Source: Octopus sinensis (Eukaryota). From it: a stretch of 64,000 bases of DNA. The notes under the pieces are model-generated. The model saw only the letters and a list, made by a program, of their open reading frames with translations. It made no database searches and was not told the DNA's origin. The position numbers and the translations under genes were made by a program. The stretch spans positions 175,584,001 through 175,648,000 of the forward strand of contig NC_042998.1 of NCBI RefSeq assembly GCF_006345805.1, read 5' to 3'. Shown one piece after another: positions 13,690 to 64,000 of the stretch (the stretch's first letter is position 1; each line of letters opens with the position of its first letter).

Positions 13690-13920
13690 GATCATCATCA
13701 TCATCATCATTGTTTAACGTCCGCTTTCCATGCTAGCATGAGTTGGACGATTTGACTGAGGGCTGGCGAACCAGATGGCTGCACCAGGTTTCAATCTTGA
13801 TCTGGCAGAGTTTCTACGGCTGGATGCCCTTCCTAACGCCAACCACTCCGAGAGTGTAGTGGGTGCTTTTACGTGCCACTGGCACGGGGGCCAGTCAGGT
13901 GGTACTGGCAACGACCTCGC
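13690..13920 (-). mobile_element. RTE-associated 3-prime-end repeat
   Basis: (CAT)n-GTTTAACGTCCGCTTTCCATGCTAGCATG tail, homologous to 14715-15058. Confidence 0.8.
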
Positions 13921-29305: not shown

Positions 29306-29636
29306 ACAATCTTGGAACCTGCATTTCGCAATCTGGGACATGCATCTCATAATCTGGGATACATATTTCAGAATCTGGGGTATGTGCTCTACAATCTGGG
29401 ACTCTCATCACACACTCTAGGGCATTCATTTACAACCTAGGATATGCATCTTACAATCAAGGGCATGCATCACACAATAAGGAGCATGAATTGCAATCTG
29501 GCATATATGTAACAATCTGGGACATGCATTACACAATTTAGCACATGAGTAACAATCTGAGACATGCATCTCACAATCTAGGGCATGCATTACACAATCT
29601 GGCACATGTGGGGCACAATCGGAGGTATATATTTCA
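29306..29636. repeat. Degenerate 19-22-bp minisatellite (ACAATCTGGGACATGCATCTC-like), about 16 units
   Basis: Recurrent ACAATCT.G..CATGCAT core. Shorter array of about 7 units in copy B at 56799-56943. Confidence 0.88.
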
Positions 29637-29940
29637 CATAAATTAGTCATACGCTACAATACAGTATCATATTTCACAGGATGAAATTTCATGATAAAAG
29701 TAATGTGATGACATTTATGAAACAACAAAATATTCCAATGACTGTGTAGAACAATCTTTGTTATTGAGTCACTCCAATAGTTAGTAGTTTGCCAAATTTA
29801 AAGTAGTCCAATGTTTAAAATGGATTTCTTCAGTGGATTTCATATGAATAAACTTCATTCATTATATAAAAAGGTATTTGATTTTTTTCCCTCATATAAA
29901 ATCTCTTTTGATTTAATATTAATTAATATAAAGTAATTAA

Positions 29941-30081
29941 TCAGTCAACTATGGACAATGTCTTTATATCTGAAAGTTTCTGTTGTATTCTGTTGCCATA
30001 TTCTTCACTAGTGTATGTCTCTGGGGCAAGATGGCCAGCTAACTCACTATAGATTTTGTAACATTCAGAGTTGTAGGCAAC
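29941..30081 (-). CDS. BIN3: BIN3 copy A exon 10 (VAYNSECYKIYSELAGHLAPETYTSEEYGNRIQQKLSDIKTLSIVD*)
   Basis: cttttcag acceptor, 141 nt to TGA. Matches the BIN3 C-terminus (KLSELRALSIVADD in human, from memory). Confidence 0.96.
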   Translation of the reverse strand, partial: VAYNSECYKIYSELAGHLAPETYTSEEYGNRIQQKLSDIKTLSIVD

Positions 30082-30979
30082 CTGAAAAGAAAAAAGAAAA
30101 AAAAGTCAATGATTAAAACCTCCATTATTGATTTCTTTAAGCAATGACAGATTTATCCTAATTAAATATCGCCCACTTCTTATGACATCAGTACTCACTT
30201 CTTTACCCAATCACGACTAAGGAGACTAGTACCCAAGCCATTGGCACATAAAAAGCACCCACTATACTGTTGGAATGGTTGGCATTAGGAAGGACATCCA
30301 GCTGTAGATCAAACTGGAACCTGGCATAGCCCTAGAGCTTACCAGTTTCAATCAAACAATTCAACCCATGCCAGCATGGAAAATGGACATTAAATGATGA
30401 TGATGGCAGTGTGGTTAAAACGTTTGCTTCCCAATCATATGTTTCTGGGTTCATCCCACTGCATGGCACTACAGGCAAGTGATTCATGCAATAATCTTGG
30501 ATGATTAAAGTTTTGTGAGAGGTTGTAATATGAGGGAGCTGAAAGAAGACCATTGTGTATATACACTTGTGTGTGTGTGTGTGTATGTTTGCTTCTCCTA
30601 GTCTTGGGATTAGATGATAGCTGTAAAGAATTATCACTGTCACACAAGCAATGCTATTCAATTACTTTACTGTGAAAACATGTCTGAACATGGGGAAATA
30701 TTACCTTGCTTGGAAACATGTGAGGATTGTTGAGAGGAAGGTTATCTAGCTCTAAAAAACTGCCCCAACATCTCTCATCTGACCGATGCAAATACAGAAA
30801 ATTCAATGTTATAATGACAACAATGAGGTACAAATAACTTGACTTCGAATTGCATTACTTGACTCCAGCCTCACCAAATAAGAAAAAAATCTTGGTTGCT
30901 AGGATACAATAGTGTGTGTGTGTGTGTGTGTGTGTGCGTGCGCGCGCGCATGTGTAAAATCTTATAATATGAAACCAAC

Positions 30980-31114
30980 CTGAGATTTGATTAATGCTTC
31001 AATACATGGTTGATAGTAACTAATTCGGAGATCATATAGTTTAGGCATATCTTCCATTAAGATTGTGTGTAGTTCATAGAACTCTTCTTTGGCTGGCGTC
31101 AAGGATTTCTGGCT
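30980..31114 (-). CDS. BIN3: BIN3 copy A exon 9 (SQKSLTPAKEEFYELHTILMEDMPKLYDLRISYYQPCIEALIKSQ)
   Basis: tatcag / gttggt, 135 nt phase 0-0. E.MP..Y..R..Y.QP..E.LI..Q motif. Confidence 0.97.
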
Positions 31115-32339
31115 CTGATAGAATTTTACAAAAAAACAAACAAACAAAAGAACACAAAATAATCACTCATTTAAAAGACAAAGTACATACAGAGTGTATA
31201 AAGATAAAAAGAAATTGGCATCTTTGATTAAGGTACAATTGATGTTTGTTAACATAATTGATGAACACTAGCTTAAGACTAGTTGCTAGGTCATCTGGCT
31301 AGATATAGCACTTAAAAGGTCCTTGAAATCAGCTTCTGTCTTGCAAGAAGAAAAGACACGCTGGATAATGTAGTGGTGGATAAACCATACATGAAAATAA
31401 GACAGAAAGCCTTTGAATCATATGTTTGCTTGATCACAGCTGTCAGGGACTAAACAAACAGCCCAAATGTAGAATTGAAATCTTTTACCTCTCCTGAGGT
31501 TCAGAGTCCAATGGCTTTCTAAACAATAGTTTTTTTCTATCTTTTATCCATTTTCTTATGCTGACATGAGAATAATAGTTTTGAAAATGTAGACTTTGTA
31601 CACTATTGCTTATATAGATAAATTCTTACAGCTATTCTTCCACCAATGAAGTAGAGTGGAATCTGTTAGTTCAATAGGGAGACTAAAGTAAACAGATATC
31701 CTTTCAACCATAGATCAGAGTGGAATCTGTTAGTTCAACAGAGAAACAAAGGTAACAGTGAGAGAGAAATATTTAACAGAAACAGAAGGAAGCTATGTAA
31801 GATTCATATGCAGTTTATTAACTCTATGACAAATGGGCTCTTCAACCGAAAGTGTTATTTTTTGCAGGTATGACAGTGTGATTAAGAAGCTTGCTCCTTA
31901 AATGTGTGGTCCCTGATTCAGTACCATTGTGTGGAACAAGAGTTTTCTGCTATACCCTCAGGCCAACCAGAACCTTGTGAGTGAATTTAGTTGACAGAAA
32001 CTGAAAGATGCCCAGTGTGTGTGTAAATGGATGTATGATTGCTACTGTTGAGTTTAGAGCTCCACGTACATTATCATCATCCAGTCTTCTTCCAGTATAG
32101 TGGTTTAGTTGCTACTATATTTAATAGTATTACTACTTATGATATACAGGGAGTATATGTAGGATAAACTGTGATAAACACAAGTTTATACCATTCGTTC
32201 GTATGTTTTTAACAGTATTGAACATATAGGAGAAAATGAGGTTAGGGCTGTGAATATTTGAAACCACTGCTGAGTCGAGATACTTGTATTTCAGATACAT
32301 TAACTAGATCTTTCCTTCTTCTTCTAGAAGGTCACACCA

Positions 32340-32480
32340 AGCTAAGCCTAATCGTTAAGCGGGTCTTGGTTTGGATTAATATTCCCTCAGTTCTGGAGCC
32401 AGCGGGATTATCCAGAAGTGATGGAAAGAAACCTGATGGTCTTACCCTCAGTCCCTGGGTTAGAGGTAGGTGCCTCTAGC
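32340..32480 (+). mobile_element. CRE/R2-like non-LTR element fragment, restriction-like endonuclease region
   Basis: IPSVLEPAGLSRSDGKKPDGLTLSPWVRGRCL matches the LEP.GL.R.DGKRPDG.T..PW..G RLE motif. Absent from copy B. Confidence 0.8.
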
Positions 32481-32891
32481 AGAATGACCCATGGTGTTTT
32501 CCTTGATAAAACACCATGTGTCATTCATGAGAGAAAAGGAAGACAGTTTGTTGTTACCTTTCTTCAGATATTTTTTTATAAAATGCAAGCTACAAAGAAG
32601 TTGACCACACCTGCCTGGGCACTTGGAACATAATGGTCCAGAACAAATACCACAAGGTATTTTGCTCAACACTAACAATTCAGTTAACCTACCAATCTAG
32701 ACAAGTACTTTATTTTATCAACTCTGGAAAGATGGAAAGCAAAATTAACATTGGTGTGACATGAACTCACAACATAAAGCATTGAAACAAGCTGCAAAGT
32801 ATTTTCTTCAAGATTAACATTTTTGTCAATTACGTAAAGATATGGTGGTGATTATAATAAAAACATTGCAAAGATAACAAGTGAACAATAC

Positions 32892-32972
32892 CTGATTTAG
32901 CTTAACAATATTGTTTCCAGTACGTTCACGTTCTTGGTACTTTTTGACCTTAGCTTCACACCTTTTGTATTC
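32892..32972 (-). CDS. BIN3: BIN3 copy A exon 8 (EYKRCEAKVKKYQERERTGNNIVKLNQ)
   Basis: gcttcag / gtattg, 81 nt. Aligns to human DYRRLQAKVEKYEEKEKTGPVLAKLHQ. Confidence 0.97.
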
Positions 32973-33316
32973 CTGAAGCAAACAGAATCATTAATCAGTG
33001 AAAATCATTGATAATGGGGTTTAGATATAAAGAACAAAGTTCACAGATAAGAGATTACTTCAACCAATGGCCTAGTGTAGCCACAGCCCTCTGGACAAAA
33101 TTAGTGAAAATATAATCCTAATCTTGAATAGGCACAAGTATGGTTGTGGTTGAGAAGTTTGCTTCCCAATCACATGGTTTTGGGTTCAGTCCAACTGTGT
33201 GACACCATTGGTCAGCTGGGCTGACCAAAGTCTTGCAAGTGAATTTGGTTGATGGAATCTGAAAGAATCCTAACAATCATATGAAGTCAAAGCAAGGAGA
33301 CAGTAACACATACACA

Positions 33317-33857: not shown

Positions 33858-33918
33858 CTCCAAAGCTTGTTCCCGCTTTTTTTCAGCTGCATGAAGACTG
33901 GGGAATATACTACTAAAC
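33858..33918 (-). CDS. BIN3: BIN3 copy A exon 7 (K-FSSIFPSLHAAEKKREQALE)
   Basis: ttacag / gtttgt, 61 nt phase 2-0. Aligns to KFGSVFPSLNMAVKRREQALQ. Confidence 0.96.
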
Positions 33919-37203: not shown

Positions 37204-37244
37204 TTTTTGACGGGTTCCACTAGCGTCTTTTGGATGTTGGAATT
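37204..37244 (-). CDS. BIN3: BIN3 copy A exon 6 (NSNIQKTLVEPVK-K)
   Basis: cattgatag / gtaagt, 41 nt phase 0-2. Aligns to VNQIQKTVIEPLKK. Confidence 0.95.
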
Positions 37245-39970: not shown

Positions 39971-40107
39971 CATTTCTTGCATATGAAGGTTCAATTTAAC
40001 AATTGAATTATCCCACTCTTCACAGTGATGCATTAATTTTGATTCTGATTTACATAATGTACTGGCCATTAAATCTTGTGTGATTCTCCGTTCACATTTA
40101 CTCAGAC
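39971..40107 (-). CDS. BIN3: BIN3 copy A exon 5 (S-LSKCERRITQDLMASTLCKSESKLMHHCEEWDNSIVKLNLHMQEM)
   Basis: gtttcacag / gtaagt, 137 nt phase 1-0. Confidence 0.95.
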
Positions 40108-41403: not shown

Positions 41404-41465
41404 TTGAAGCTGTCTCTGAGCACTTTTTAGAATCCTTGTAAAGTTTCCTACATGTCTCCTCAAGT
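41404..41465 (-). CDS. BIN3: BIN3 copy A exon 4 (E-LEETCRKLYKDSKKCSETAS-S)
   Basis: atatttcag / gtgagt, 62 nt phase 2-1. Aligns to LEEQTRRLQKDMKKSTDADL. Confidence 0.96.
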
Positions 41466-45254: not shown

Positions 45255-45295
45255 TCTTCAAGCTTCTTGCCTTCCTTTTCAAATTCTTTTTCTTC
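45255..45295 (-). CDS. BIN3: BIN3 copy A exon 3 (EEKEFEKEGKKLE-E)
   Basis: gtttttcag / gtgagt, 41 nt phase 0-2. Aligns to VERDFEREYGKLQQ. Confidence 0.95.
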
Positions 45296-46531: not shown

Positions 46532-46580
46532 ATTCCACAAAGTAACATTTCTTTTTGGTGTAGAAAGTTGCTTGAATATT
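46532..46580 (-). CDS. BIN3: BIN3 copy A exon 2 (K-IFKQLSTPKRNVTLWN)
   Basis: gtatttacag / gtaagt, 49 nt phase 2-0. Same size and phase as recalled for vertebrate BIN3 exon 2. Confidence 0.88.
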
Positions 46581-47934: not shown

Positions 47935-49480
47935 ATCCATTGTCCATGTTGGCATGTGTTGAATGGTTTGACCAAGGCTGGAAAGCTGGAAGGCTGCACC
48001 AGACTCCAGTCTGATTTGGCATGGTTTCTACCAATGGATCCCCTCCCTAAAGCCAACAACTGAGTGTAATGTGTGCTTTTATATGCTACTGGCATGGGTG
48101 CCATTTGTGTGACACCAGTATCTGCCATGACTGTGGTTTTACTTAGTTTGATGGGTCTTTGTCTCAGGCCTGACAACGCCAAAGGTCAGGGTCATTACCA
48201 CCATGAAGCCCAAGACTCGAAAGGAGCTTTTCATGTGCCACTGGCATCAGCCACTTTGCCTCAGTGAGGCCCAATGCTTGAAAGGTGCTTCTTACATGGC
48301 ACCAGTATGAGTGCCGGTTACATGACACCAGCATAAGCCACAACTAGTTCACTTGGCGAGATGGGTCTTCCCAAGGACAGCATATTGTCAAAGGTCTTGG
48401 TCACTAGTCATTGCCTCTGCGAGGGCCAAAGTTTGAAGATCATGCTTCACCACCTTGTCCCATGTCTTCCTGGGTTTACCGCAATCACAAGATCCAACGA
48501 CAGTTACAGATCAGCACTTTTTTACACAATGCTGTTGTCTATCTTGTACAACACATCTGATGTCACTTATGCCCAACTTTTCTCTCAAGATGCTTACACT
48601 CTGTCAAACATGCACACTGACATTGCACATCCAGCAAAGCATACTGACTTCATTTCTTTCAGGCCTATGCATGTCCTCAGCTGTCACAGCCCATGTTTCA
48701 CTGCTGTGTAGCTTAGTTTGCACACAGGCATCATACAATCTGCCTTCCACTCTGAGGGAGAGACCCTTTGTTGCCAGCAGAGGTAGGAGCTCCTTGAACT
48801 TTGCCCAGCCTAGACTTATTCTTAGAGCTACACTCTCAGAGCATCCACCTCCACAACTAACTTGGTCTCCCAGATAATGGAAGCTATCTACTATCTCTAG
48901 CACACCCCACTGGCAGTTGATGGAGTCTATTTTCTGTACATTTTTGGTGTTTATTGTACCTGTGCATCTTCCACACACAAAAGCTGATTTTCCCTGTTAA
49001 CCTTCCTCAGATATTGCTGCACCTCTAGCTTATACTGGGTACATCTTATGGAGTTTCTACCTATGCTTTTTCTACAGATCAAGCAGAGCTATCTATCTGA
49101 AAGGATTTGTGAGTTGTCTGCTCTCCTACTTACTAGGACTTTGGTTTTTGCAAGGTTAACTCTAAGGCCCTTCGATTCTAGACCTTGCCTCCATACTTGA
49201 AACTTCTATAGTTCTGGTAGTGACTCAGCTAAAAGAACACGGTTATCAGTGTAGAGGAGCTCCCAGGGGCAGCCTGTCTTAAACTCCTGCTATTGTCTAG
49301 ACGACTATGATGAACATGAGGGGGCTGAGGACTGATCCTTGGTGAACAGCTACTTGTACCCTAAATCCTTTGCTGTACTCATGGCCAACCCTCACCTTAC
49401 TGGTAGCATCCCTGTACATGGCTTGTACAGCTCTCACCAACCACTTATCTATTACCTAGGATGGACATGGCTAATCACAG
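47935..49480 (-). mobile_element. RTE-clade LINE fragment with RT core
   Basis: Minus translation FRVQVAVHQGSVLSP, PWELLYTDN, GLESKGLRVNLAKTK, VDSFHYLG and ALRISLGWAKFKELLPLL. Confidence 0.9.
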
Positions 49481-49924
49481 GCCTGCTCAATCACAACTGA
49501 CAACAGAAACTGTCAAATTTATTAAGCAGTCAAAGAAAAATTTTCTATCATGAATTACATTTTATTTTATTTGTTTATTTCTAAAAATAAATGACACAGC
49601 TGAAGCATGATAATTGCAACTATTAAAGCTGGGTTTGCAACCCAATTTTTTTTTCAGCTAGTTCGGTGAAGGTGGGAATTGAGTACAATGATATGATAGA
49701 TCCTGTATTCAATAAGACTGCCTCAGTCCACCACATTGCAACAGCTGGCTTCAAATAATTTGAAAAATCCAAGCACCATAACCTCAATCAAATACTAGCT
49801 TCTAAACATTAAAAACATAGCATACTTATATCTGATTTGGGGAATCCCATGCAATTCTATGAATCATATATAATCATCATGGTAAATGTTCAGTTTGGTT
49901 AGATTAAAAAAGTAAATAAAAATT

Positions 49925-50967: not shown

Positions 50968-51564
50968 GGCGGCGAGCTGGCGGCAGAAACGTAAGCACGC
51001 CGGGCAAAATGCTTAGCAGTATTTCGTATGCCGTTACGTTCTGAGTTTAAATTCCGCTGAGGTCAACTTTGCCGTTCATCCTTTTGGGGTCGATCAAATA
51101 AGTACCAGTTACGCACTGGGGTCGATGTAATCGACTTAATCCCTTTGTCTGTCCTTGTTTGTCCCCTCTGTGTTTAGCCCTTTGTGGGTAGTAAAGAAAC
51201 AGGTATTTCGTCTGCCGCTACGTTCTGAGTTCAAATTCCGCCGTGGTCGACTTTGCCTTTCAGCCTTTCGGGGTCGATAAACTAAGTACCAGTTACGCAC
51301 TGGGGTCGATGTAATCGACTTAATCCCTTTGTCTGTCGTTGTTTGTCTCCTCTATATTTAGCAATAAAGAAATAAGAAACTTTAGCACGCCGGGCGAAAT
51401 GCTTAGCCGTATTTCGTCTGTCTTTATGTTCTGAGTTCAAATTCCGTCTTTCCTTTCATCCTTTCGAGATCGATAAATTACGTACTAGTAGCGTAGTGGG
51501 ATCGATCTAATCGACTGGTTCCCTCCCTCAAAATTTCGGGCCTTGTGCCTAGAGTAGAAAAGAA
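50968..51564 (+). mobile_element. Head-to-tail trimer of a third tRNA-SINE family (MetaSINE-like central segment)
   Basis: Three repeats of GGTATTTCGTCTG..GAGTTCAAATTCCG..GCCTTTCATCCTTTCGGGGTCGATAAA..AAGTACCAG. Flanked by 17-bp direct repeats TAYGCTTATTACACGAA (50951-50967, 51565-51581). Confidence 0.85.
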
Positions 51565-53225: not shown

Positions 53226-53233
53226 TTGCTCAT
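53226..53233 (-). CDS. BIN3: BIN3 copy A exon 1 coding part (ATG AGC AA, MS-K); assembled CDS is 251 aa
   Basis: ATGAGCAA/gtaaat: 8 coding nt, phase 2, the same architecture as recalled for vertebrate BIN3 (ATGAGCTG). Lies in a CpG-richer promoter-like region. Confidence 0.8.
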
Positions 53234-53903
53234 TTTCTGGTATTATATTTCCAACCACATCAGTTGACGATGTTAATGGATAGATAACTCTGCTGTCAAT
53301 GGTTCTGCGAGGTACGTGTACTTATCATCTTTAATTGATATTCCGTGTTACTGTTTCAAGCATCTGGCGAAACCCTAAACGTCACAAAATTCTCCGCTTT
53401 TCTTTTTCTTTTCTTCTTTCTATTTTGTCTTTGTCAGAACCAATCAAATGCCTGAAGAAACAAAGAAACAATTCACCGTTACGAACGAAATATAACACAC
53501 CCAGCCGCACCAAATAGTTTACTTTGTATTTATACTATTGGAGTTAACGAAAAAGAAAACAAAACAAAAACAACTATACATTCTGGATAGGATGGAGCTG
53601 GTAGCAACCTATTTCGGTTAAGTTTATTATGTTAAGTTTATTATATTAAGTTTATAACAAAGTGAAGCATTAAAAAGCTAACTTGAAATATTTATGCAGG
53701 AAAAGGGGTGGGGGGAATTTTGGAAATACCCGAGGCAATTATGTTTCAGTATTATTATGATCTCATCAGCGAACTTTGTCATTCATATTTCCAGTCGTTA
53801 AGTGTAGGGTATCTTCTAGATACTGGAATCGATTTAGTTGATTATATTTCTTGATTCAAACCTATCTGATTAAATCAACAATACGATTTTCACATACACA
53901 CGG

Positions 53904-53947
<44 letters not shown>

Positions 53948-55869
53948 ACGTATGTATACCTATTTCTTTATTACCCACTAGGGGCTAAACACAGAGGGGA
54001 CAAACAAGGACAGACATAGGTATTAAGTCGATTACATCGACCCCAGCGCGTAACTGGTACTTAATTTATCGACCCCGAAAGGATGAAAGGCAAAGGGTTC
54101 GAACGGAACCTACAAAGTCTTGTTACTCTGTTCGTCACCTGGTTCGTATATCAGTAAAGAAACTCGATCAAGTTAGTGGTTTGGGCATGTTTCTTTTTTG
54201 GTGGTTGTATGGTCTTCCTATGACTAATTACTTCATAGAGTGGCTGGGTTCATTTTATGATATCACCAGCGCTAAAGAAAATATTTGTAGAGTCCTCTCT
54301 AACTTGTCTGAAGGTTCTTTCTCTCTTTCATTTTTTCTTTCATTCATTCTTTCTTTCGTTCTTTCTTCCTGCCTTCTTTTCTGTCTTTTTGCCCAGTTAT
54401 TATAATAAACAAGTTGCATTTGCTTAGACTTTGGTATACTCTGCTCAGTATAGTTTTTGACATGTTAGCGAGTATGTGTGTGTGTGTGTGTGCGATAGAC
54501 GTCACCAGGATATCTGTCAAGAGACAAGCAGACAGCCAGCAGTTAACTTGCGCCAGTCAAGCAGCCAACATAGAACTACATATTCAGCATGAACGACCCA
54601 ACACTTTAGCAGTTGCGGAACGTAAACAGACACGACCGAATGACCAATGCATACACAGACACAAAACATACTGGTTCTACCTCATCACATCAACACAGTA
54701 TTTCCCCTGTTTATTTTTCTACTTCGCCAACTCGAAGCAATTTGGTAATGTCATGTAGTGAATTTTCTGGTGTATACAACACGTAAATGCAAGTGTTGAT
54801 TAAATAAGTTATTTAAACCATAATCCGATGCTTTCCCATTGTTTTACTTTGATGTCATCCACATGCCTATTTCATCTGCTGCCTCGACAGCTTTTGCTAT
54901 ACCATCCACTACAGCTGTTATGAAACTAAATTTATATTGTATAAATGATATGTATGTATGTATGTATGCATGCATGGTCGGCGACTAAACTGGTGACCCC
55001 ATCAAGCTTGCTTGGTGAGGAGGGTGATTGTTGGACACCCTCCAGGACGAAAAATAAGACCTGTCAAATGGGGAAGAGCTCATGAGCAGTCAAAGGCCAT
55101 CTGACAATATGTATACATGTGTATGTATGCGTGGGGACATGGGAATAGCTGGGTTGGTGTCCAGGAATGTGGTTGGGCCACTGGGAGCAGAAGGCTCCTC
55201 TCTTGTTGTCACATGCCTCTAGGAGAGGGACTCTCCAAGAGAAAACCTGTAACATGGACAATATTCAATGATGTTGGCAAGTTCTTCTTTTCGAGTTTAT
55301 GTTGTCCATGTTCAGAGAGTATGACTGGATTTGTGCAAATCCCTTCTCCACTATAAAAAAAAAAAAAATATCCTCATGCGCAGGCATTGCTTGAAAAAAA
55401 CGTAAGACCTATCATAAAAATGGCTAGTCGTAGCTTTCGCCAATGTGGGACTTTCGATCAGGTGTTGGCAATACTCAAACACAAGTTTGCAGCCTTCATG
55501 TAGGTAGGTAGGTGCAGTATGGCTGAATGTTTAAGGAGTTAGTTTCAAAGCAATGAGGTCTCCATACAATTGCATGGGGTTTTGGGCGAGTGGTATTGTT
55601 TATTTGCAACTTTGTCACACAAGGTTCTGCCTAAGTATCACATTAGACGCACACATATGTATGTGTGTATGTCTTTTCCTTCTTTTTGCTTATTAGCATT
55701 CTCTCTCGAATAAGAGAATCAGTTTTGAATACAATAACAAAAGCTTCATTACTGCAGTTTGGATATTAATAGCTATAACTGTTACATCTCTATATTTATG
55801 AAAGTCTCGTATATTTTTACTATTCCATGTACAGATAGTATTTACAAAGTTCATGCTAGTCATTTTCTT

Positions 55870-56433
55870 TTTTTACTTGAAAATCCTAGCTAACTCCAAA
55901 TTGAGGTAGACAGCTCTTTGAAAGGACTTGGAGCAACTATCATACAAGATGGCAAACCTTGCATCGAAAGCCCTTGACAAAACTCAGTCAAACTACCCAA
56001 ATATCGATCATGAAATGCTAGCTGTGGTATTTGGAATCACCCGTTTCCACACATACCTTTACAGACATCCATTTGAAATCATCACAGGCCACTATCCCTG
56101 GAAGTGATTGCAAAAAAAAACCCCGTCTTCAAGTACTACCCCAACTACAAAGGATGCTCCAGAAAATTCAGGGATATGATTCCAAAATCAAATACCGCCC
56201 AGGGCATGCCATGACATTGACTGACAATCTCTTTCACCTCTCAATCTGTGAAGACAATGAAAACATTGAGAGTGGATGGGATCGAATTGACTATGGGAGA
56301 AACCCACCAATCTGAATTTGACCTTGTCAATTTTTCCATCAACAAACATTACCAATTGCATGAGTTCACCAGCAGAGATTCTACTTTGGTTATACTGATG
56401 GAAACAATCACCTATGGGTGGGGAGACAACATC
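55870..56433 (+). mobile_element. Ty3/Gypsy pol fragment (RNase H and linker), truncated at the duplication junction
   Basis: TQSNYPNIDHEMLAVVFGITRFHTYLY..PFEIIT.H.PLE, LQRMLQKIQGYD.KIKYRPG and TITYGW motifs, with frameshifts. Confidence 0.9.
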
Positions 56434-57293
56434 AATAACAATTAAGCTCAATTATTGTATGATGAGTTTAATGTATCAAAGAAGAAAAATAAAACAAAAA
56501 ATAACTCAAATCTGTCCATTTACAATTGCCTTTTAATTTGACTTCTGTAATTTGTTTAATTTAAAATTGTTTGGGATCTTAGGAGTATGAGTATTGGATC
56601 AACCTAAAACACCCAGTGGTTCAAAAAGGCTGAAGGCAGTATAGTACTATAGTAATAAAAGATTTAGTTCTGAATCCTTAAAAAAGTAAGACCTGCAACA
56701 TGTGTTGCAATTACTACAAGATAAATCCATCGCTGATATAATGATGGTCTTCAGATCATGTCAGCATTTTATTTTTCTCATCAATGAATACATATTTTAC
56801 AATCTTGGAACCTGCATTTCGCAATCTGGGACATTCATCTCATAATCTAGCAAATGCACAACAATCTGAGATATACATCTCACAATCTAGGGCATGCGTT
56901 ACAAGATCTGGCACATGTGATAAACAATCTGAGGCATTTATTTCTTATTTCTTTATTGCCCACAAGGGGACAAGCAAGGACAGACAAAGGGATTAAGTCG
57001 ATTACATGATGCATTCATTTCTACAGTATCATATTTTACAGGATGAAAATTTCATGATAAAAGTAATGTGATGACATTTATGAAACAACAAATGTGTAGA
57101 ACAATCTTTGTTATTGAGTCACTCCAATAGTTAGTAGTTTGCCAAATTTAAAGTAGTCCAATGTTTAAAATGGATTTCTTCAGTGGATTTCATATGAATA
57201 AACTTCATTCATTATATAAAAAGGTATTTGATTTTTTTTTCCCTCATATAAAATCTCTTTTTGATTTAATATTAATTAATATTAAGTAATTAA

Positions 57294-57434
57294 TCAGCCA
57301 ACTATGGCTAATGCCTTTATATCTGAAAGTTTCTGTTGTATTCTGTTGCCATATTCTTCACTAGTGTATGTCTCTGGGGCAAGATGGCCAGCTAACTCAC
57401 TATAGATTTTGTAACATTCAGAGTTGTAGGCAGC
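57294..57434 (-). CDS. BIN3: BIN3 paralog B exon 10 (AAYNSECYKIYSELAGHLAPETYTSEEYGNRIQQKLSDIKALAIVG*)
   Basis: ttctacag acceptor, 141 nt, intact. 5 substitutions versus copy A. Confidence 0.9.
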   Translation of the reverse strand, partial: AAYNSECYKIYSELAGHLAPETYTSEEYGNRIQQKLSDIKALAIVG

Positions 57435-58702
57435 CTGTAGAAAAAAAAGAAAAAAAAAAAGAGTCAATGATTAAAACCTTCTTTATTGATTTCTTTAAGC
57501 AATGACAGATTTATCCTAATTAAATATCCCCAACCTCCTTTAACCTCAGTACTCACTTCTCCAACCAAATCACAACTAAGGAGACTATCTAAACATGACA
57601 GAGTAACCTCCACTTGACCATCGCTCTGTAGTCTTCTGTCTCAATAATCTCCATGAGAACACACCACTTACATTGATGCACATACATACACTGGCATATA
57701 CACACATTAAGACACTTCCTACACACTTAAGGATCAACACTGAAACCAATGAGGGAGCTTCTATGCAGTCAATCAGCTTGCTAGAAACAGTGCTTAATAT
57801 ATTAAAAAAAAGGGAATGGTCATGGTTAGATTGCTTCTTTGATTGGAGGTCAGGTGGATGAGGACTGACATGATGCTGTAAAAAGAATCTACCTCAATGA
57901 ATTCTGTCTGAGCCATGCAAGCATGGAAAAGTGGACATTAAAACAATGATGATGATGATTTTTCAATTGTTGGCATCATGGGTCAAATGAAACTTCCCTG
58001 AGACAGATTTTCTATGGCCAGATACTCTTTCTGTTACCAACCCATACCTATTTTCCAAGTAATACAAATTACAAATATATGCATAATATATATGCTTAAC
58101 TGGTACCCATGCCATTGGCATATAAAAAGCACCCACTACACTGTTGGAATGGTTGGCGTTAAGAAGGACATCCAGCCATAGAAACCATGCCAAATCAGAT
58201 TGGAACCTGGCATAGCCCTAGAGCTTACCAGTTTCAGTCAAACCATCCAACCCATGGAAAATGGACGTTAAATAATGATGATGATGATGGCTGTGTGGTT
58301 AAGACATTTGCTTCCCAATCATATAGTTCGGCACCTTAGGCAAGTGATTCATATAATAGCCTTGGATGATTAAAGCTTTGTGAGAGGGTGTAATAGGAGG
58401 AAATTGAAAGAAGCCCATTATGTATGTTTGTGTGTGTGTGCACGCGTGCATGTGCATGTATGTATGTTTGTTAGTCGTAAAGCATTATCACTGTCATACA
58501 ATTACTTTTCTGTGAAAACATGTCTGACCATGGGGAAATATTACTTTGTTCAGAAACATGTGAGTGTTGTTGAGAGGAAGGGCATCCAGCACTAAAAAAT
58601 AGTCTCAACATCTCTCATCTGACCCATTCAAGTATAGAAAAGCACAAACATGGGTACAAGTGTGTGTGTGTGTGTGTTAAAATCTCATAATATGAAACCA
58701 AC

Positions 58703-58837
58703 CTGAGATTTGATTAATGCTTCAATACATGGTTGATAGTAACTAATTCGGTGATCATTTAGTTTAGGTATACCTTCCTTTAAGGCTGTGTGTAGTTTAT
58801 TGAACTCTTCTTTGACTGGCATCAAGGATTTCTGGTG
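58703..58837 (-). CDS. BIN3: BIN3 paralog B exon 9 (HQKSLMPVKEEFNKLHTALKEGIPKLNDHRISYYQPCIEALIKSQ)
   Basis: Splice sites intact, 135 nt open. 13 substitutions versus copy A. Confidence 0.9.
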
Positions 58838-58918
58838 CTGATAGAATTTAACATAAAAAAAAGAACCCAAAAAAAAAACCAAAAAAAAACAGAATAATCA
58901 CTTGTTTAAAAGACAAAG

Positions 58919-60610
58919 TATTGGGTCATCGCATAAATAATACAGTTTTTTGCAATTGCATGAACTAAAAGTCAGAGGTAGATGGGATCAACTACCTGCA
59001 TCGACTTGCTATAAAAGCAGGTAGTAATTTTACTTTGTACTTATTCTTAGTGCAGGTTTTGAAGAGTGCAGTTCAATTTTAACAGTTATTTTTTTCAAAG
59101 CTATAATGAAAGTGAGAAAGGAGCATATTTGAAATGTTTTGCTCTATGAGTTCAATAAAGGCAACGATGCAATGGAAAGTGTGAGGAATATTAATGCAGT
59201 ATATGGGGATCGGACAATAAGTGTAAACCAGTGTCAACGGTGGTTCCAGAAATTCCCAGCTGGAAACTACAGTCTAGAAGACAAGCCTTCTCCTGGAAGA
59301 TCTGTAGAGCTTGACAATGGCGTCCTGTAAACCCTGGTGGAACAAAATCCCATTATAACTGTTGAAGAACTAGTGCAGAAGCTTGGATTTGGTCATCAAC
59401 ACCTGCGTGCCATTGGAAAAGTCAGAAAATTGGGTCAATGGGTTCATCACAAACTTTCCAAGTCTAATTGCACACAAAGAGTGAATGTGTGCTCTTTTCA
59501 CGAATGTACCTTTTTTGGACCCTAATAGTAACTGCTGATGAGAAATAGGTTCTCTATAAAAATGTCAAGCACCAAAGACAGTGGGTAGGTAAAGGAGAAA
59601 CAACGGCACCCCAAGTTAAAGAAGGCCTTCACCTATGTAAGGTAATGTTATCTGTTTGGTGGGATATGAAAGGTGTAGTGACGCCAGGTTTTAGATGCCA
59701 TGTGCAATGTTTGGTGTCTTCCGGTAGGCCTGCCAGAAGTCCCCTTATGCGCATGCACAGTAATCAGCAGCAGTTAGCTTTTCTCGCTATTCGATCTCTT
59801 GGCTCTTGGCGGTCGACAAATTAAGATATGACTCGGCAAGGCTCCGAGCGGAGGTGAACCAGACGTGGTGGGTGGTGAAGACTGTTTCAACCATGGAGAT
59901 TTAATCCAACTCTGCTGTTTCCTATCCCTGGTTTTCACGCTTCTGATGTCCAGCGATGAAATATCTCCTTCGGTGAAAAAATAAACTATCATTGTTATTT
60001 GTTCAGAGATTCATGTTCCTGCCATTTCATTCCTTTCTACAACATTGTAGGGAAATGTGTGAAGCACCCAACAAGTGCAGATATCACACATAGATAGATA
60101 ACAATCCTACAAAGGTTTAGTCCACTTTGAACTTTTAAACCCAAACCAAACGATAACAAAGGAGATCTATCATAAGCAGCTTGAGCGGCTTAAGTCAGCG
60201 TTAGAAGAAAAATGACAATTTTTGGTTTCAAGACAAAAGGTGTTCTTCCATCAGAATAATGCTTGGCCACATACAGAAGGATGACTTTTCAAAGGCTGGA
60301 GCAGTTTGAAATGATGCTTCACCTACCATATTTGCCAGACATTGCCCTGTCTGATTATCATTTATTCTGTAGTCTTCAAAATTATTTGGATAGGAAAAAT
60401 ATGAATTCTGTAGATGAGGTCTACTGGAAGAGTATTTTTCATCACGGACAAGTAAATTTTGGAAGAGGGTCTTGCAAGTCAACCAGATAGATGGAAGAGC
60501 ATTGTAGAAAATGAAGGAGTTTATTTTAGATTAAAAAAGAACTTTGTTTATCTTAATTTTGAAAAATAAAAGAAGCATAAAAATCGCATTATTTACAGGA
60601 TGACCCAGTA
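58919..60610 (+). mobile_element. Degenerate near-full-length mariner inserted at TA, specific to copy B
   Basis: TATTGGGTCATCGCATAAATAA / TTATTTACAGGATGACCCAGTA TIRs. Translations LLYEFNKG, CQRWFQKF, LEDKPSPGR, KLGQWV.HKL, VMLSVWWDMKG and HLPYLPDIALSDYHLF. Copy A has the empty site CAAAGTA.ATACAG. Confidence 0.93.
59674..60111. mobile_element. Solo-LTR-like insertion nested in the mariner transposase
   Basis: Starts TGTAG, ends CTACA, 4-bp direct repeat AAGG on both sides (59670-59673, 60112-60115). Splits the WDMKG/LVHFELL coding sequence. AATAAA near 59990. Confidence 0.75.
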
Positions 60611-62753
60611 TATACAGAGTGTATAAAGATAAAAAAGAAATTGGTATAGTAGCGTACACTTGAGTGAAATTCCTCTCCTTTCTATTATATATACATACAT
60701 ACGAACATAGTAGATAACAGCAAGCCTTTGGCTGCATTTTGGACCCTGTTGTGTCCACTACTCTGATTGGTTGGTATTGGTGCAATTCATCTCTTGCTCT
60801 TTCACGTGTCAATATGCAAACCAACCAATCACAGCCTTCAAATAAGATCACATGTGACAGCCTGTTTTCTACCTCAGCTGAGCCTACAACTCCTTGTAAA
60901 AAACCTCACTTTTTTTGTCTCGATGTCATCTGGTTCCAGACCTTTTAAGGTTTAGCCACTGACCACACAAGACACCACCAGTTCCAGTGACAACACAACA
61001 GCAGCCACGTGGAGACTCATCAACTTCATCCAACAGCATTCAGTGACCTCCATCCCCATCACCACCATTTGTCCTAACGTCAACATCTCTCTAAGTACAC
61101 ACCCAAGTTACAACACTGCACTGTTCATGAACTGCTTCACCATGGATCAACAGTGAATGTACATCTTGTGAGAACTCTTGTACCAAGTGAGCTTGGCAGC
61201 AGCACCACAGCCACAACTTCATGTACGACATGTACCACAACCAGCTCTGCATCATTGCCGCAACTTATTGATACAGTATTTCAACTATCATGTACAATTG
61301 ACTACAAACTGGTGTTTATCATCCTTGTGTCTATGAACTTAGTCCTCACTTCAATGGCTATAGACTCTTTCACTGTCTCTTCTTCATTGCCATCCTTGTA
61401 TGTTCTTAACGTGCATACATCTAAGCCTACATACACATGCATACATCTTATTCTTATGATGGCCTGTCTATTATTCTGTATATATGACGCATATATGATT
61501 ACACATGTTAACATACCAATAAATCTTCCCTTAAACATACTACCCGGTTGTGTCTCTTATTTACCTCTGGCACATATATGCATTGTTCTATTTATATTTA
61601 TTGTACCAACTGTGTGATGTACTGAGGAGCCATTCTCATCACCTCACTTCATATGGACGTCACAAATCGGCGACCCATTCCAGCTCCTTGAACTACGAAA
61701 CAATTATAATGGGAGAATGAGATATTCCACAGGTATCTAAACCTTCTATTTCATTATAGTATCTTTGATTAAGGTACAATTGATGTTTGTTAACATCACT
61801 GATGAACACTAGCTTAAGACTAGTTGCCAGGTGATCTGGCTAGATATAGCACTTAAAAGGTCCTTGAAATCAGCTTCTGTCTTGCAAGAAGAAAAGACAT
61901 ACTCGATAATGTAGTGGTGGATAAACCATACATGAAAATAAGACAGAAAGCCTTTGAATCATATGTTTGCTTGATCACAGCTGTCAGGGACTAAACAAAC
62001 AGCCCAAATGTAGATTTGAAATCTTTTACCTCTCCTGAGGTTCAGAGTCCAATGGCTTTCTAAACAATATCTTCTATCTTTTATCCATTTTCTTATGCTG
62101 ACATGAGAATAATAGTTTTGAAAGTGTAGACTTTGTACACTATTGCATATATAGATAAATTCTCACAGCTATTCACCCACCAATGAAGTAGAGTGGAATC
62201 TGTTAGTTCAATAGGGAGACTAAAGTAAAGAGATATTCTTTCAACCATAGATCAGAGTGGAATCTGTTAGTTCAATAGGGAGACTAAAGTAAACAGATAT
62301 CCTTTCAACCATAGATCAGAGTGGAATCTGTTAGTTCAACAGGGAAACAAAGGTAACAGTAAGAGAAACAGAAGGAAGCTATGTTAGATTCATATGCAGT
62401 TTATTAATTCTATGACAAATGGGCTCTTCAACCGAAAGTCTTATTTTTTGTAGGCATGGCAGTGTGATTAAGAAGCTTGTTCCCTAAATGTGTGGTCTCA
62501 GGTTCAGTATCATTGTGTGGTACAGGAGTCTTCTGCTACAACCTCAGGCCAACCAGAACCTTGTGAGTGAATTTAGTTGACAGAAACTGAAAGAAGCTCA
62601 GTGTGTGTGTGTGTGTGTGTGTGCATGTGAGCACACGCAAATGGATGTATGATTGCTACTGTTGAGTTTAGAGCTCCACGTAGATTATCATCATCCAGTC
62701 TTCTTCCAGTATAGTTTTTTAGTCATTGCTATATTTAATAGTATTATTATTAG

Positions 62754-62958
62754 CATGCCGGGCGAAATGCTTAGCGGTATTTCGTCTGCCGCTACGTTCT
62801 GAGTTCAAATTCCGCCGAGGTTGACTTTGCCTTTCATCCTTTTGGGGTCGATTAAATAAGTACCAGGTACGCACTGGGGTCGGTATAATCGACTTAATCC
62901 ATTTGTCTGTCCTTGTTTGTCCCTTCTGTGTTTAGCCCCTTGTGGGTTGTAAAGAAAT
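62754..62958 (+). mobile_element. tRNA-SINE (same family as 50968), specific to copy B
   Basis: Absent at the corresponding copy A site (about 32128). Flanked by GTATTA[T/C]TA direct repeats. Confidence 0.88.
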
Positions 62959-63587
62959 AAGTATTACTACTTATGATATACAGGGAACAAATATAGGATA
63001 AACTGTGATAAACACAAGTTTATACCATTTGTTCGTATGTTTTTAACAGTATTGAACATATGGGAGAAAATGCAGTTAGGGCTGAGAATATTTGAAACCA
63101 CTGCTGAGTTGAGATACTTGCTGTATTTCAGATATATTGACTAGATCCTTCCTTCTGCTATCAGGTTAATGAATGACACATGGTGTTTTCCTTGATAAGT
63201 TATGTGTTTCATATGGAATTATCATGAGAGAATAGGAAGACAGTTTGCTGTTACCTTTCTTCAGATATTTTTTATAAAATACAAGCTACAAAGAAGTTGA
63301 CCACACCTGCCTGGGCACTTGGAACAGGATGGTCCAGACCAAATACCACAAGGTATTTTGCTCAACACTAACAATTCAGTTAGTCTATCACTCTAGACAA
63401 GAACTTTATTTTATCAACTCTGGAAAGATGGAAAGCAAAATGAACATTGGTGTGACATGAACTCACAACATAAAGCATTGAAACAAGCTGCAAAGTATTT
63501 TCTTCAAGATTAACATTTTTGTCAATTACGTAAAGATTTGGTGGAGATTATAATAAAAACATTGCAAAGATAACAAGTGAACAATAC

Positions 63588-63668
63588 CTGATTTAGCTTA
63601 ACAATATTGTCTCCAGTACGTTCACGTTCTTGGTACTTTTTGACCTTAACTTCACATCTTTTGAATTC
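63588..63668 (-). CDS. BIN3: BIN3 paralog B exon 8 (EFKRCEVKVKKYQERERTGDNIVKLNQ); exons 1-7 would lie beyond the window
   Basis: gcttcag / gtattg, 81 nt open. 4 substitutions versus copy A. Confidence 0.9.
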
Positions 63669-64000
63669 CTGAAGCAAACAGAATCATTAATCAGTGAAAA
63701 TCATTGATAATGGGGTTTAGATATAAAGAACAAAGTTCACAGATGATTGGAGATTACTTCAACCAATGGCCTAGTGTAGCCACAGCCCTCTGGACAAAAT
63801 TAGTGAAAATATAATCCTAATCTTGAATAGGCACAAGTATGATTGTGGTTGAAAAGTTTGCTTCCCAATCACATGGTTTTGGGTTCAGTCCAACTGTGTG
63901 GCACCATGGGTGAGTGTTTTCTATTATAGTACTGAGCTGACCAAAGCCTTGTGAGTGAATTTGGTTGATGGAAACTAAAATAAGCCCAATAATCATACAA

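What the first reader, a model, noticed from the sequence alone, without database searches (positions are those of the whole stretch)
57294..63668. Young BIN3 paralog with an almost purely nonsynonymous divergence pattern
Codon-by-codon comparison of copy A and copy B gives: exon 8, 3 nonsynonymous and 1 synonymous change; exon 9, 13 and 0; exon 10, 4 and 1. The total is 20:2 over 118 codons, with no stops or broken splice sites. Exon 9 changes (S>H, T>M, A>V, Y>N, E>K, I>A, M>K, D>G, M>I, Y>N, L>H) all fall in its first 29 codons. They break the conserved E-D-M-P-x-L-Y motif (EDMPKLY to EGIPKLN) and shift exon 9 charge by about +4. A non-repetitive intron sample differs by about 3 percent and the proximal 3-prime UTR by about 1 percent. 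A rough binomial with about a quarter of mutations synonymous gives p of about 0.02-0.03 for exon 9 alone (post hoc) and about 0.06-0.09 overall, which is suggestive only. BIN3 (Rvs161/Hob3 N-BAR family) is usually single copy as far as I know. Inference: a more basic BAR helix 3 could change membrane binding or dimer pairing, but early decay is also possible. Both copies carry some human-like residues, so both lineages changed.
Basis: partly seen in the sequence, partly recalled or inferred. Interest (0 to 1): 0.75.

Follow-up and report, generated by a model that had tools for sequence, protein, structure and literature searches.

The report
Fast-evolving tandem BIN3 paralog in Octopus
Octopus sinensis carries a second, already annotated copy of the membrane-bending gene BIN3 next to the first; the copy is older than it looks because gene conversion keeps resetting parts of it, and its protein changes at or above the neutral rate while its reading frame stays intact.

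Summary
The codon counts are correct: exon 8 has 3 nonsynonymous and 1 synonymous change, exon 9 has 13:0 and exon 10 has 4:1. There are no stops and all splice sites are GT-AG.

The window is Octopus sinensis. Copy A is BIN3 (XP_036356360/XP_029654272). Copy B is the annotated "bridging integrator 3-like" gene (XP_036356654), with orthologs in O. vulgaris and O. bimaculoides.

"Young" is wrong. B-type derived residues and 71 noncoding sites group B with B across species, so the duplication predates the O. bimaculoides split. Other tracts group A with B within each species (intron 4: 48 sites against 1). That is mosaic gene conversion, and it explains the low synonymous and UTR divergence at the 3' end.

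Outgroups place 17-18 of the 18 amino-acid changes on B. Copy A is strongly constrained (omega 0.04-0.07).

Full-length pairwise dN/dS is 0.93. On the B lineage alone N:S is 39:4 (p=0.009), and my maximum-likelihood omega is 2.3 (p=0.027).

B keeps an intact 10-exon, 251-codon ORF in two species. It has lost its Pfam BAR match and several invariant residues. The O. bimaculoides copy shows early lesions.

Best reading: a functional, divergently evolving paralog. Slow decay remains a real rival. Expression is untested.

The parts
63588..63668 (-). Copy B (BIN3-like, XP_036356654) exon 8, codons 134-160. Differs from A by 3 nonsynonymous changes (Y135F, A140V, N153D) and 1 synonymous change.
58703..58837 (-). 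Copy B exon 9, codons 161-205. Thirteen nonsynonymous and no synonymous changes, all in the first 29 codons, which form the N-terminal third of BAR helix 3 just after the tip loop.
57294..57434 (-). Copy B exon 10 with its TGA stop, codons 206-251. Four nonsynonymous changes and 1 synonymous change. Lies in a gene-converted tract.
56822..57293 (-). Copy B 3' UTR and the downstream end of the duplicated unit, homologous to A at 29513-29940. The proximal 270 nt are about 99% identical to A and carry sites shared by A and B within species.
58921..61760 (.). B-specific 2.8 kb insertion in intron 8: a degenerate mariner/Mos1-type element with an HTH_48 domain, stop codons and an internal interruption.
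57588..58098 (.). B-specific 511 nt segment in intron 9 with no counterpart in A.
62750..62959 (.). B-specific 210 nt repeat insertion in intron 8. Other copies lie at 50994-51362 and 53956-54095.
53226..53233 (-). Copy A (BIN3) exon 1, the coding part ATGAGCAA.
53234..53945 (-). Copy A promoter-proximal segment, homologous to the region upstream of B exon 1 at 75-83% identity. This is the 5' end of the duplicated unit. 53946-56821 is an unduplicated spacer.
46532..46580 (-). Copy A exon 2
45255..45295 (-). Copy A exon 3
41404..41465 (-). Copy A exon 4
39971..40107 (-). Copy A exon 5
37204..37244 (-). Copy A exon 6
33858..33918 (-). Copy A exon 7
32892..32972 (-). Copy A exon 8
30980..31114 (-). 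Copy A exon 9
29941..30081 (-). Copy A exon 10 with stop

Best explanation
The window holds a tandem pair of BIN3 genes on the minus strand of an Octopus sinensis chromosome. Copy A is the conserved BIN3. Copy B lies upstream, and only its exons 8-10 are inside the window. It is the annotated "bridging integrator 3-like" gene.

The duplication covered about 24 kb, from roughly 0.7 kb upstream of the ATG to roughly 0.4 kb past the stop. It happened before O. sinensis/vulgaris split from O. bimaculoides.

Since then, gene conversion between the two copies has repeatedly homogenised tracts in both species lineages. These tracts include intron 4, the exon 8 region and exon 10 with its 3' UTR. Other tracts, such as introns 6, 7 and 9, keep the old divergence. 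This resetting is why the 3' end looks young and has almost no synonymous or UTR differences.

Against that background A stays under strong purifying selection. B has left the BIN3 constraint regime. It accumulates amino-acid replacements at or above the neutral rate. The replacements are concentrated in the stretches of the three helices that I infer form the distal arms of the BAR crescent. They include invariant basic residues. The inferred central dimerisation region stays nearly identical to A.

Shown: the paralogy, its age, the conversion mosaic, the asymmetry between the copies, omega of at least 1 on B, and the intact ORF.

Inferred: B is a functional, adaptively diverging BAR protein. 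It may still pair with A or with itself through the conserved core, but with altered arm and membrane properties. Selection on B-specific residues, including selection against conversions that would erase them, produces the nearly pure nonsynonymous pattern.
For: Identity of the genes:
- The A model is 100% identical to XP_036356360 from O. sinensis.
- B equals XP_036356654. The O. vulgaris protein CAI9717246 differs from window B by one residue over the 118 codons.

Intact gene:
- B has a 10-exon, 251-codon ORF with GT-AG splice sites in O. sinensis and O. vulgaris.
- Given 63 neutral substitutions, the chance of no premature stop is 0.017.
- There are no frameshifts, although noncoding DNA shows about 0.25 indel events per substitution.

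Age and conversion:
- 71 noncoding sites group B_sin with B_bim. The full-length orthology tree beats the concerted tree by 9.4 lnL.
- Intron 4 has 48 A=B-within-species sites against 1 orthology site. Intron 9 has 4 against 24. Fisher p=9e-15.
- For exons 8-10 the concerted tree is better by 10.4 lnL.
- dS between A_sin and B_sin is 0.187 in exons 1-7 and 0.029 in exons 8-10. The species-level dS between the A orthologs is about 0.11.
- A_bim and B_bim share the E>D change in YQDRERTG.

Asymmetry:
- A_sin against A_bim gives omega 0.04.
- Lineage-specific counts are B_sin 39N:4S, A_sin 3N:6S and A_bim 0N:6S.

Omega above 1 on B:
- Binomial test on 39:4 gives p=0.0086.
- Maximum-likelihood omega_B is 2.28, with a likelihood-ratio test against 1 at p=0.027. 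For exons 8-10 omega is 3.7, p=0.043.
- dN of B_sin against pooled synonymous changes gives p=0.015.
- B_sin-specific changes are 39/651 in exons against 54/2176 in the flanking 250 nt, p=4e-5. The intron proxy is biased low.

Replication in a second species: exon 9 of O. bimaculoides B has 8N:0S at different codons. The two lineages together give 21:0, p=0.002.

Spatial pattern: 39 of 126 residues are changed in 13-54 and 106-189, against 9 of 113 in 55-105 and 190-251, p=8e-6.
Against: - No expression evidence could be obtained.
- B's substitutions hit metazoan-invariant BIN3 positions as often as variable ones: 8 of 35 against 17 of 58. Examples are K12E, K43E, D44A, K112E, R128W and L132F/S.
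- Pfam BAR no longer detects B_sin or B_bim, whereas A scores 65 bits. Both points fit loss of the ancestral function.
- O. bimaculoides B has lost the exon 6 acceptor (AG>AC, with an in-frame cryptic site that removes 6 codons) and its stop codon (TGA>TCA, adding 4 residues). RefSeq models it as only 183 aa.
- Omega above 1 is only nominally significant. Against A-lineage synonymous sites alone it is not significant (p=0.21).
- Filtered intron columns evolve more slowly than synonymous sites (2.3-2.9% against 4.9%) and more slowly than bulk noncoding DNA between B_sin and B_vul (0.15% against 0.45%). The exon-versus-intron excess is therefore overstated.
- The conversion mosaic violates the single-tree assumption of the maximum-likelihood test, and the codon-model code is my own.
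- Part of the "conserved core" coincides with converted tracts, so it may reflect conversion rather than constraint.
Confidence: 0.6

Rival explanations
1. Relaxed or dying duplicate. After duplication B lost the BIN3 constraint and drifts neutrally at omega near 1. The intact ORF in O. sinensis/vulgaris is luck helped by repeated repair through gene conversion from A. The nonsynonymous excess is sampling noise, plus conversion erasing part of the record.
For: - Full-length pairwise omega is 0.93.
- Substitutions do not avoid invariant sites, and the Pfam BAR match is lost.
- O. bimaculoides B has lost a splice acceptor and its stop codon, and its omega does not differ from 1 (p=0.12).
- B_sin against B_vul shows 3N:2S at about the noncoding rate.
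- Conversion from A is demonstrably active and could remove lesions.
Against: - The B_sin lineage N:S of 39:4 departs from the neutral 0.75 fraction (p=0.009). The likelihood-ratio test rejects omega=1 at p=0.027.
- The chance of no premature stop after 63 neutral substitutions is 0.017. In addition there are no frameshifts and all 18 splice junctions are intact.
- Exon 9 is 21N:0S across two independent B lineages.
- Replacements are strongly non-uniform along the protein (p=8e-6).
Confidence: 0.3
2. One reading: a very recent duplicate, with about 1-3% neutral divergence, that underwent a short burst of replacements in exon 9.
For: The 3' UTR is about 99% identical and some intron stretches about 97-98% identical to A. 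Only 2 synonymous differences occur in exons 8-10.
Against: - B orthologs exist at the same position in O. vulgaris and O. bimaculoides.
- B_bim shares B-type derived residues in exons 4-7: T106M, V111I, A123E and R128W.
- 71 noncoding orthology sites are present, and intron 9 is 13% diverged between A and B.
- dS in exons 1-7 is 0.187, above the species-level 0.12.
Confidence: 0.03
3. Exon-limited conversion from a third, diverged BIN3 sequence, for example a processed retrocopy elsewhere in the genome. This would have pasted a cluster of differences into B exon 9 without touching the introns.
For: The exon 9 changes form a sharply bounded cluster of 13 in 87 nt, followed by 0 in the next 48 nt. 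No 87-column noncoding window reaches 13 B-specific changes; the maximum is 10.
Against: - A diverged donor would carry synonymous differences too, but the tract is 13N:0S.
- Protein searches found only the A and B clusters in Octopus.
- B_bim shows a different, equally nonsynonymous set of changes in the same exon.
- The whole genome could not be scanned.
Confidence: 0.04
4. Assembly artefact: an uncollapsed haplotype or a mis-joined duplicate.
For: None beyond the generic risk that repeat-rich cephalopod assemblies carry.
Against: The same A-B tandem arrangement, with the same B-specific substitutions, is present in independent chromosome-level assemblies of O. sinensis, O. vulgaris and O. 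bimaculoides. The copies differ by several TE insertions and by 21% of their residues.
Confidence: 0.01

Closest known systems
BIN3 / Rvs161 / Hob3, the BAR-domain-only branch of the amphiphysin/BIN family
   Same: Copy A is the O. sinensis BIN3 ortholog. It scores 65 bits on Pfam BAR, has 10 coding exons and is 49-56% identical to other molluscan BIN3 proteins. Copy B descends from it. B is 79% identical to A, has the same exon structure, lies in tandem, and its AlphaFold model has the three long BAR helices with Foldseek best hits to arfaptin, amphiphysin and BIN1.
   Different: B no longer reaches any Pfam BAR threshold. It has replaced residues that are invariant or nearly so across metazoan BIN3: K12E, K43E, D44A, K112E and R128W. 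It evolves with omega of at least 1, against 0.04-0.07 for A. In the search results other molluscs showed one BIN3 each; this was not a rigorous copy count.
Concerted evolution with selected differences, as in the primate red/green opsin genes (from my own knowledge, not tested here)
   Same: Tandem paralogs in which gene conversion homogenises introns and neutral sites, while amino-acid differences persist. Exons can then be as divergent as, or more divergent than, the adjacent introns, and the differences are mostly nonsynonymous. Here exon 8 and exon 10 with its UTR sit in tracts where A and B agree within species, yet they keep B-specific replacements.
   Different: No phenotype is known for the retained differences. 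The B-specific residues are not shared between O. sinensis and O. bimaculoides in exons 8-10, so they are not one ancient protected haplotype.
Rvs161-Rvs167 obligate BAR heterodimer of yeast (from my own knowledge)
   Same: A BIN3-family protein working with a second, diverged BAR protein. B keeps residues 55-105 and 190-245 almost identical to A. I infer that this is the dimerisation core, so A-B pairing is conceivable.
   Different: Rvs167 is an ancient amphiphysin-type partner with an SH3 domain, not a recent BIN3 duplicate. Heterodimerisation of A and B is pure inference.
Unprocessed (duplicated) pseudogene
   Same: Asymmetric acceleration, loss of family-conserved residues, omega not below 1, and early lesions in the O. 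bimaculoides ortholog.
   Different: There is no stop, frameshift or broken splice site in O. sinensis or O. vulgaris after about 63 lineage substitutions. The N:S ratio exceeds the neutral expectation.

Membership tests
BIN3 / BAR-domain family (copy B) | Sequence match to the Pfam BAR domain (PF03114) above the gathering score | tested here: not met
   A scores 65.4 bits and the decapodiform outgroup 65.7 bits. B_sin has no BAR hit, only Arfaptin at 21.9 bits against a cutoff of 32. B_bim has none.
BIN3 / BAR-domain family (copy B) | Descent from BIN3: high identity, same exon-intron structure, syntenic tandem position | tested here: met
   B is 79% identical to A. It has 10 exons with identical phases and lengths. 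The promoter, introns and 3' flank are collinear with A.
BIN3 / BAR-domain family (copy B) | Three-helix BAR fold | tested here: met
   The AF2 model has pLDDT 84.7 with helices at 13-68, 70-146 and 152-223. Foldseek top hits are the arfaptin-2, amphiphysin and BIN1 BAR domains. Caveat: the alignment behind the model is dominated by canonical BIN3 sequences.
BIN3 / BAR-domain family (copy B) | Retention of residues invariant across metazoan BIN3 | tested here: not met
   Eight of 35 positions that are at least 90% conserved are replaced, including K12E, K43E, K112E, R128W and L132.
BIN3 / BAR-domain family (copy B) | Dimerisation and membrane binding or bending | not testable with these tools
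   Needs biochemistry or multimer modelling with coordinates.
Paralogs under concerted evolution (gene conversion) | Tracts where paralogs within a species are more alike than orthologs between species, alternating with tracts of orthologous signal | tested here: met
   Intron 4 has 48 concerted sites against 1 orthology site. Intron 9 has 4 against 24. p=9e-15. For exons 8-10 the concerted tree is better by 10.4 lnL, whereas the full CDS prefers orthology by 9.4 lnL.
Positively selected duplicate (neofunctionalisation) | Branch omega significantly above 1 | tested here: inconclusive
   N:S is 39:4, p=0.009. Maximum-likelihood omega is 2.28, p=0.027. Against pooled synonymous sites p=0.015, but against A-lineage synonymous sites alone p=0.21. 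The mosaic genealogy violates the single-tree assumption.
Positively selected duplicate (neofunctionalisation) | The gene is expressed and makes a protein | not testable with these tools
   No transcript data were reachable. The protein database held no octopus transcript-derived BIN3 for either copy.
Unprocessed pseudogene | Disabling lesions: stop, frameshift or lost splice site | tested here: not met
   None in O. sinensis or O. vulgaris. O. bimaculoides B has a lost acceptor and a lost stop, both bypassed in frame.

The most novel reading that the evidence does not exclude
Octopus has evolved a second BIN3-derived BAR protein. Its distal arms, and especially the first third of helix 3, are a recurrent target of positive selection in separate species: 21 nonsynonymous and 0 synonymous changes in exon 9 across two lineages. 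Gene conversion with BIN3 preserves a common dimerisation core. This would give a BIN3 / BIN3-like pair that could act as a heterodimer or as a modulator of membrane or actin remodelling, specific to this cephalopod lineage.
Probability: 0.35. Interest if true: 0.6.

Novelty: new member of a known kind. Interest (0 to 1): 0.42.

Why it matters
BIN3 is a conserved BAR protein. A lineage-specific duplicate that keeps its reading frame while evolving at omega of at least 1 would offer two things:
- a natural experiment on which parts of a BAR domain can be remodelled;
- a clean case of selection working against gene conversion.

The case also shows that local intron or UTR identity can badly underestimate the age of a tandem duplicate. 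Pairwise dN/dS, in turn, hides strong asymmetry between the two copies.

The practical value is modest. The gene is already annotated, the statistics are nominal, and nothing is known about its expression.

Tried and rejected
- A global MAFFT alignment of the two copies misaligned across the 2.8 kb insertion. I replaced it with BLAST-anchored maps.
- The first greedy HSP chain dropped exons 7, 9 and 10. I redid it segment by segment between exon anchors.
- The first maximum-likelihood run timed out and I rewrote it.
- A B_sin / B_vul noncoding divergence of 1.1% came from overlapping HSPs. The non-overlapping chain gives 0.45%. The inferences I drew from 1.1% are withdrawn.
- I considered an "episodic burst, then slowdown". 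It is rejected: the exon-to-noncoding ratios on the stem and on the terminal branches do not differ (37:3 against 117:7, p=0.71).
- I treated the exon-versus-intron rate excess as the main proof of selection, then downgraded it. Filtered intron columns evolve two to three times more slowly than synonymous sites and bulk noncoding DNA.
- Heptad periodicity of the exon 9 changes: 8 of 11 fall on two heptad positions (p=0.002, post hoc), but there is no single-face helical moment (p=0.8). B_bim shows no such pattern. This is left unexplained.
- Look-ups of P0001 and P0086 returned nothing on record.
- O. bimaculoides B exons 1-3 were not within the fetched flank.
- Literature searches for BIN3 with octopus or cephalopod found nothing relevant.

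Full report
**What is in the window.**
- The BIN3-like sequence is on the minus strand.
- A self-comparison shows that 57022-63997 is collinear with 29660-33281.
- Translation gives two versions of the last three coding exons.
- A profile search shows that the copy A gene model is 100% identical to "bridging integrator 3" of Octopus sinensis, XP_036356360 and XP_029654272. The window is therefore O. sinensis chromosome CM016860.1.
- Copy A has ten coding exons between 53233 and 29941.
- Copy B lies upstream of A in the direction of transcription. Only its exons 8-10 are in the window.
- Copy B is already annotated as "bridging integrator 3-like": XP_036356654 in O. sinensis, CAI9717246 in O. 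vulgaris, and XP_014770144 / A0A0L8HSJ3 in O. bimaculoides.

**Check of the observation.**
- The eleven exon 9 replacements, the change of EDMPKLY to EGIPKLN and the +4 charge shift are all present.
- Splice sites and the stop codon are intact.
- With a neutral nonsynonymous fraction of 0.74-0.75 derived from the intron mutation spectrum, the binomial p is 0.048-0.059 for 20:2 and 0.023 for 13:0.
- The proximal 3' UTR differs by about 0.8%.
- Intron divergence is not uniformly 3%. It ranges from 0 to 14% per 100 nt. By my tally of the and 13 alignments it averages 6-8% in substitutions, the same level as the exons (6.2%).

**The rest of copy B.** I fetched the B loci of O. sinensis (L003), O. 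vulgaris (L002) and O. bimaculoides (L004), and the A locus of O. bimaculoides (L005).
- In O. sinensis and O. vulgaris, B has an intact 251-codon ORF in ten exons. The exons have the same lengths and phases as in A, and all junctions are GT-AG. Exons 1-7 therefore carry no disabling lesion.
- The duplicated unit runs from about 0.7 kb upstream of the ATG exon to about 0.4 kb past the stop. A spacer of about 2.9 kb is not duplicated.

**Polarity.** Two decapodiform-like BIN3 transcripts from Logan (L001, L006), plus O. bimaculoides A, place 17-18 of the 18 replacements in exons 8-10 on B. Only T246 is derived in A. The statement that both lineages changed is therefore essentially not supported.

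**Age and gene conversion.** The duplication predates the split from O. bimaculoides:
- O. bimaculoides B shares B-type derived residues in exons 4-7 (T106M, V111I, A123E, R128W). Both A copies share A-type derived states.
- 71 noncoding sites group B with B and A with A.
- The full-length CDS prefers the orthology tree by 9.4 lnL.

Yet 92 noncoding sites group A with B within each species, and the two signals are spatially separated:
- Intron 4 has 48 concerted sites against 1 orthology site. Intron 9 has 4 against 24. Fisher p=9e-15.
- Exon 8, and exon 10 with the 3' UTR, sit in concerted tracts.
- For exons 8-10 the concerted tree is better by 10.4 lnL.
- A_bim and B_bim share an E>D change in exon 8.
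- dS between A_sin and B_sin is 0.187 in exons 1-7 but 0.029 in exons 8-10. The A orthologs of the two species differ by about 0.11.

The "young" appearance of the 3' end comes from mosaic gene conversion, not from a recent duplication.

**Selection regime.**
- A is strongly constrained, with omega 0.04 pairwise and 0.067 by maximum likelihood.
- Pairwise full-length A/B omega is 0.93. This figure mixes two very different lineages.
- Changes specific to the B_sin lineage, over codons 34-251 where all four genes align, are 39N:4S. The other lineages show 3N:6S (A_sin), 0N:6S (A_bim) and 23N:3S (B_bim).
- 39:4 departs from neutrality at p=0.0086.
- My own GY94-F3x4 branch model gives omega 2.28 for the O. 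sinensis/vulgaris B branches, with a likelihood-ratio test against 1 at p=0.027. B_bim has omega 2.45, p=0.12. For exons 8-10 under the concerted tree omega is 3.7, p=0.043.
- B_sin-specific changes are 6.0% in exons and 2.5% in the flanking 250 nt of intron (p=4e-5).

I discount the last test. The filtered intron columns evolve more slowly than A-lineage synonymous sites (2.3-2.9% against 4.9%). They also evolve more slowly than bulk noncoding DNA between B_sin and B_vul (0.15% against 0.45%). Against pooled synonymous sites p=0.015. Against A-lineage synonymous sites alone p=0.21.

Omega on B is therefore robustly at least 1 and probably 1.5-3, with nominal significance.

Exon 9 behaves the same way in a second lineage. 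O. bimaculoides B has 8N:0S there at different codons, and the two lineages together give 21:0, p=0.002. This is a post hoc observation.

**Is B decaying?**

Against decay:
- After about 63 B-lineage substitutions, the chance of no premature stop is 0.017.
- There are no frameshifts, although noncoding DNA shows about 0.25 indel events per substitution.
- All 18 junctions are intact.

For decay or loss of the ancestral role:
- Substitutions hit invariant BIN3 positions as often as variable ones: 8 of 35 against 17 of 58, including K12E, K43E, K112E and R128W.
- Pfam BAR no longer detects B.
- O. bimaculoides B has lost the exon 6 acceptor and its stop codon. Both are bypassed in frame.
- B_sin against B_vul shows 3N:2S at about the noncoding rate. 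That excludes A-like constraint and is compatible with omega near 1.

**Where the changes fall.** An AlphaFold model of the O. vulgaris B protein has pLDDT 84.7. It shows helices at 13-68, 70-146 and 152-223, a tip loop at 147-151 and a C-terminal helix at 230-250. The nearest solved folds are the arfaptin, amphiphysin and BIN1 BAR domains.
- Replacements are concentrated in 13-54 and 106-189 (39 of 126 residues). They are rare in 55-105 and 190-251 (9 of 113). p=8e-6.
- From general BAR architecture I infer that the first set forms the distal arms and the second the central dimer bundle. I could not check coordinates.
- Part of the conserved set coincides with converted tracts.
- Net charge barely changes: +2 in A and +1 in B. 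The +4 in exon 9 is offset by -5 in exons 1-7.

**Conclusion.** It is an old tandem duplicate that undergoes gene conversion and is already annotated. The nearly pure nonsynonymous pattern results from two things. Conversion erases neutral differences at the 3' end. Replacements then accumulate on B alone, at or above the neutral rate.

I favour a functional, divergently selected BAR paralog in the O. sinensis/vulgaris lineage, at about 0.6. Relaxed constraint with slow decay is the main rival, at about 0.3. Expression data and denser species sampling would decide between them. No paper on this gene pair was found in the held library.

Noticed in passing
window 58921-61760: A degenerate mariner/Mos1-type transposon sits in copy B intron 8 and is absent from copy A. 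Its N-terminal HTH_48 domain scores 64.8 bits but carries in-frame stops, and unrelated sequence appears to interrupt the element around 59680-60060.
   Followed up: partly
window 62750-62959; also 50994-51362 and 53956-54095: A repeat of about 160-210 nt is inserted in B intron 8 only. Several 89-91% identical copies lie elsewhere in the window. ARAGORN finds no tRNA-like gene in the window.
   Followed up: partly
window 58099-58641 / 30225-30801, and many other places (e.g. 13696-13895, 12061-12258, 17915-18068, 47942-48106): An interspersed repeat family is present at the same place in intron 9 of both copies. It therefore predates the duplication. It is 14% diverged between A and B and rich in orthology-type sites, so this stretch seems to have escaped gene conversion.
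   Followed up: partly
window about 49829-49858 (minus strand): An alternative small coding exon of copy A encodes the extra IAWDSPNQI of BIN3 isoform X1 (260 aa). It lies between exons 1 and 2.
   Followed up: no
L003 10001-10048 and 13136-13198 (outside the window, upstream of copy B): The O. sinensis RefSeq model of B (283 aa) starts from two upstream exons, 12-15 kb 5' of the A-like exon 1, that A's coding model does not contain. If the model rests on transcripts, this hints at a separate promoter and at expression. The evidence behind the model could not be checked.
   Followed up: no
L004 12655-12695 and 29408-29422 (O. bimaculoides copy B): The exon 6 acceptor is mutated from AG to AC, and an in-frame cryptic acceptor 18 nt downstream is used. 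The stop codon TGA is mutated to TCA, which extends the protein by SLVT.
   Followed up: yes
copy B exon 9, codons 161-189 (window 58751-58837): Eight of the 11 replaced residues fall on two heptad registers: 161, 168, 182, 189 and 166, 173, 180, 187. The post hoc simulation p is 0.002. Stripe 166-187 changes T, Y, M, Y to M, N, K, N. There is no single-face helical moment, and no such pattern in O. bimaculoides B. Unexplained.
   Followed up: partly
window 19298-19642 (+), 27389-27721 (-), 48604-48978 (-): ORFs of 110-124 aa that looked like transposon fragments give no Pfam match.
   Followed up: partly
L003 6304-7062 and L005 40671-42747: Neighbouring genes: a PCO_ADO (cysteamine dioxygenase-like) gene lies upstream of B in O. 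sinensis, and a PRELI/CRAL-TRIO gene lies downstream of A in O. bimaculoides. The pair is embedded in ordinary single-copy context.
   Followed up: no
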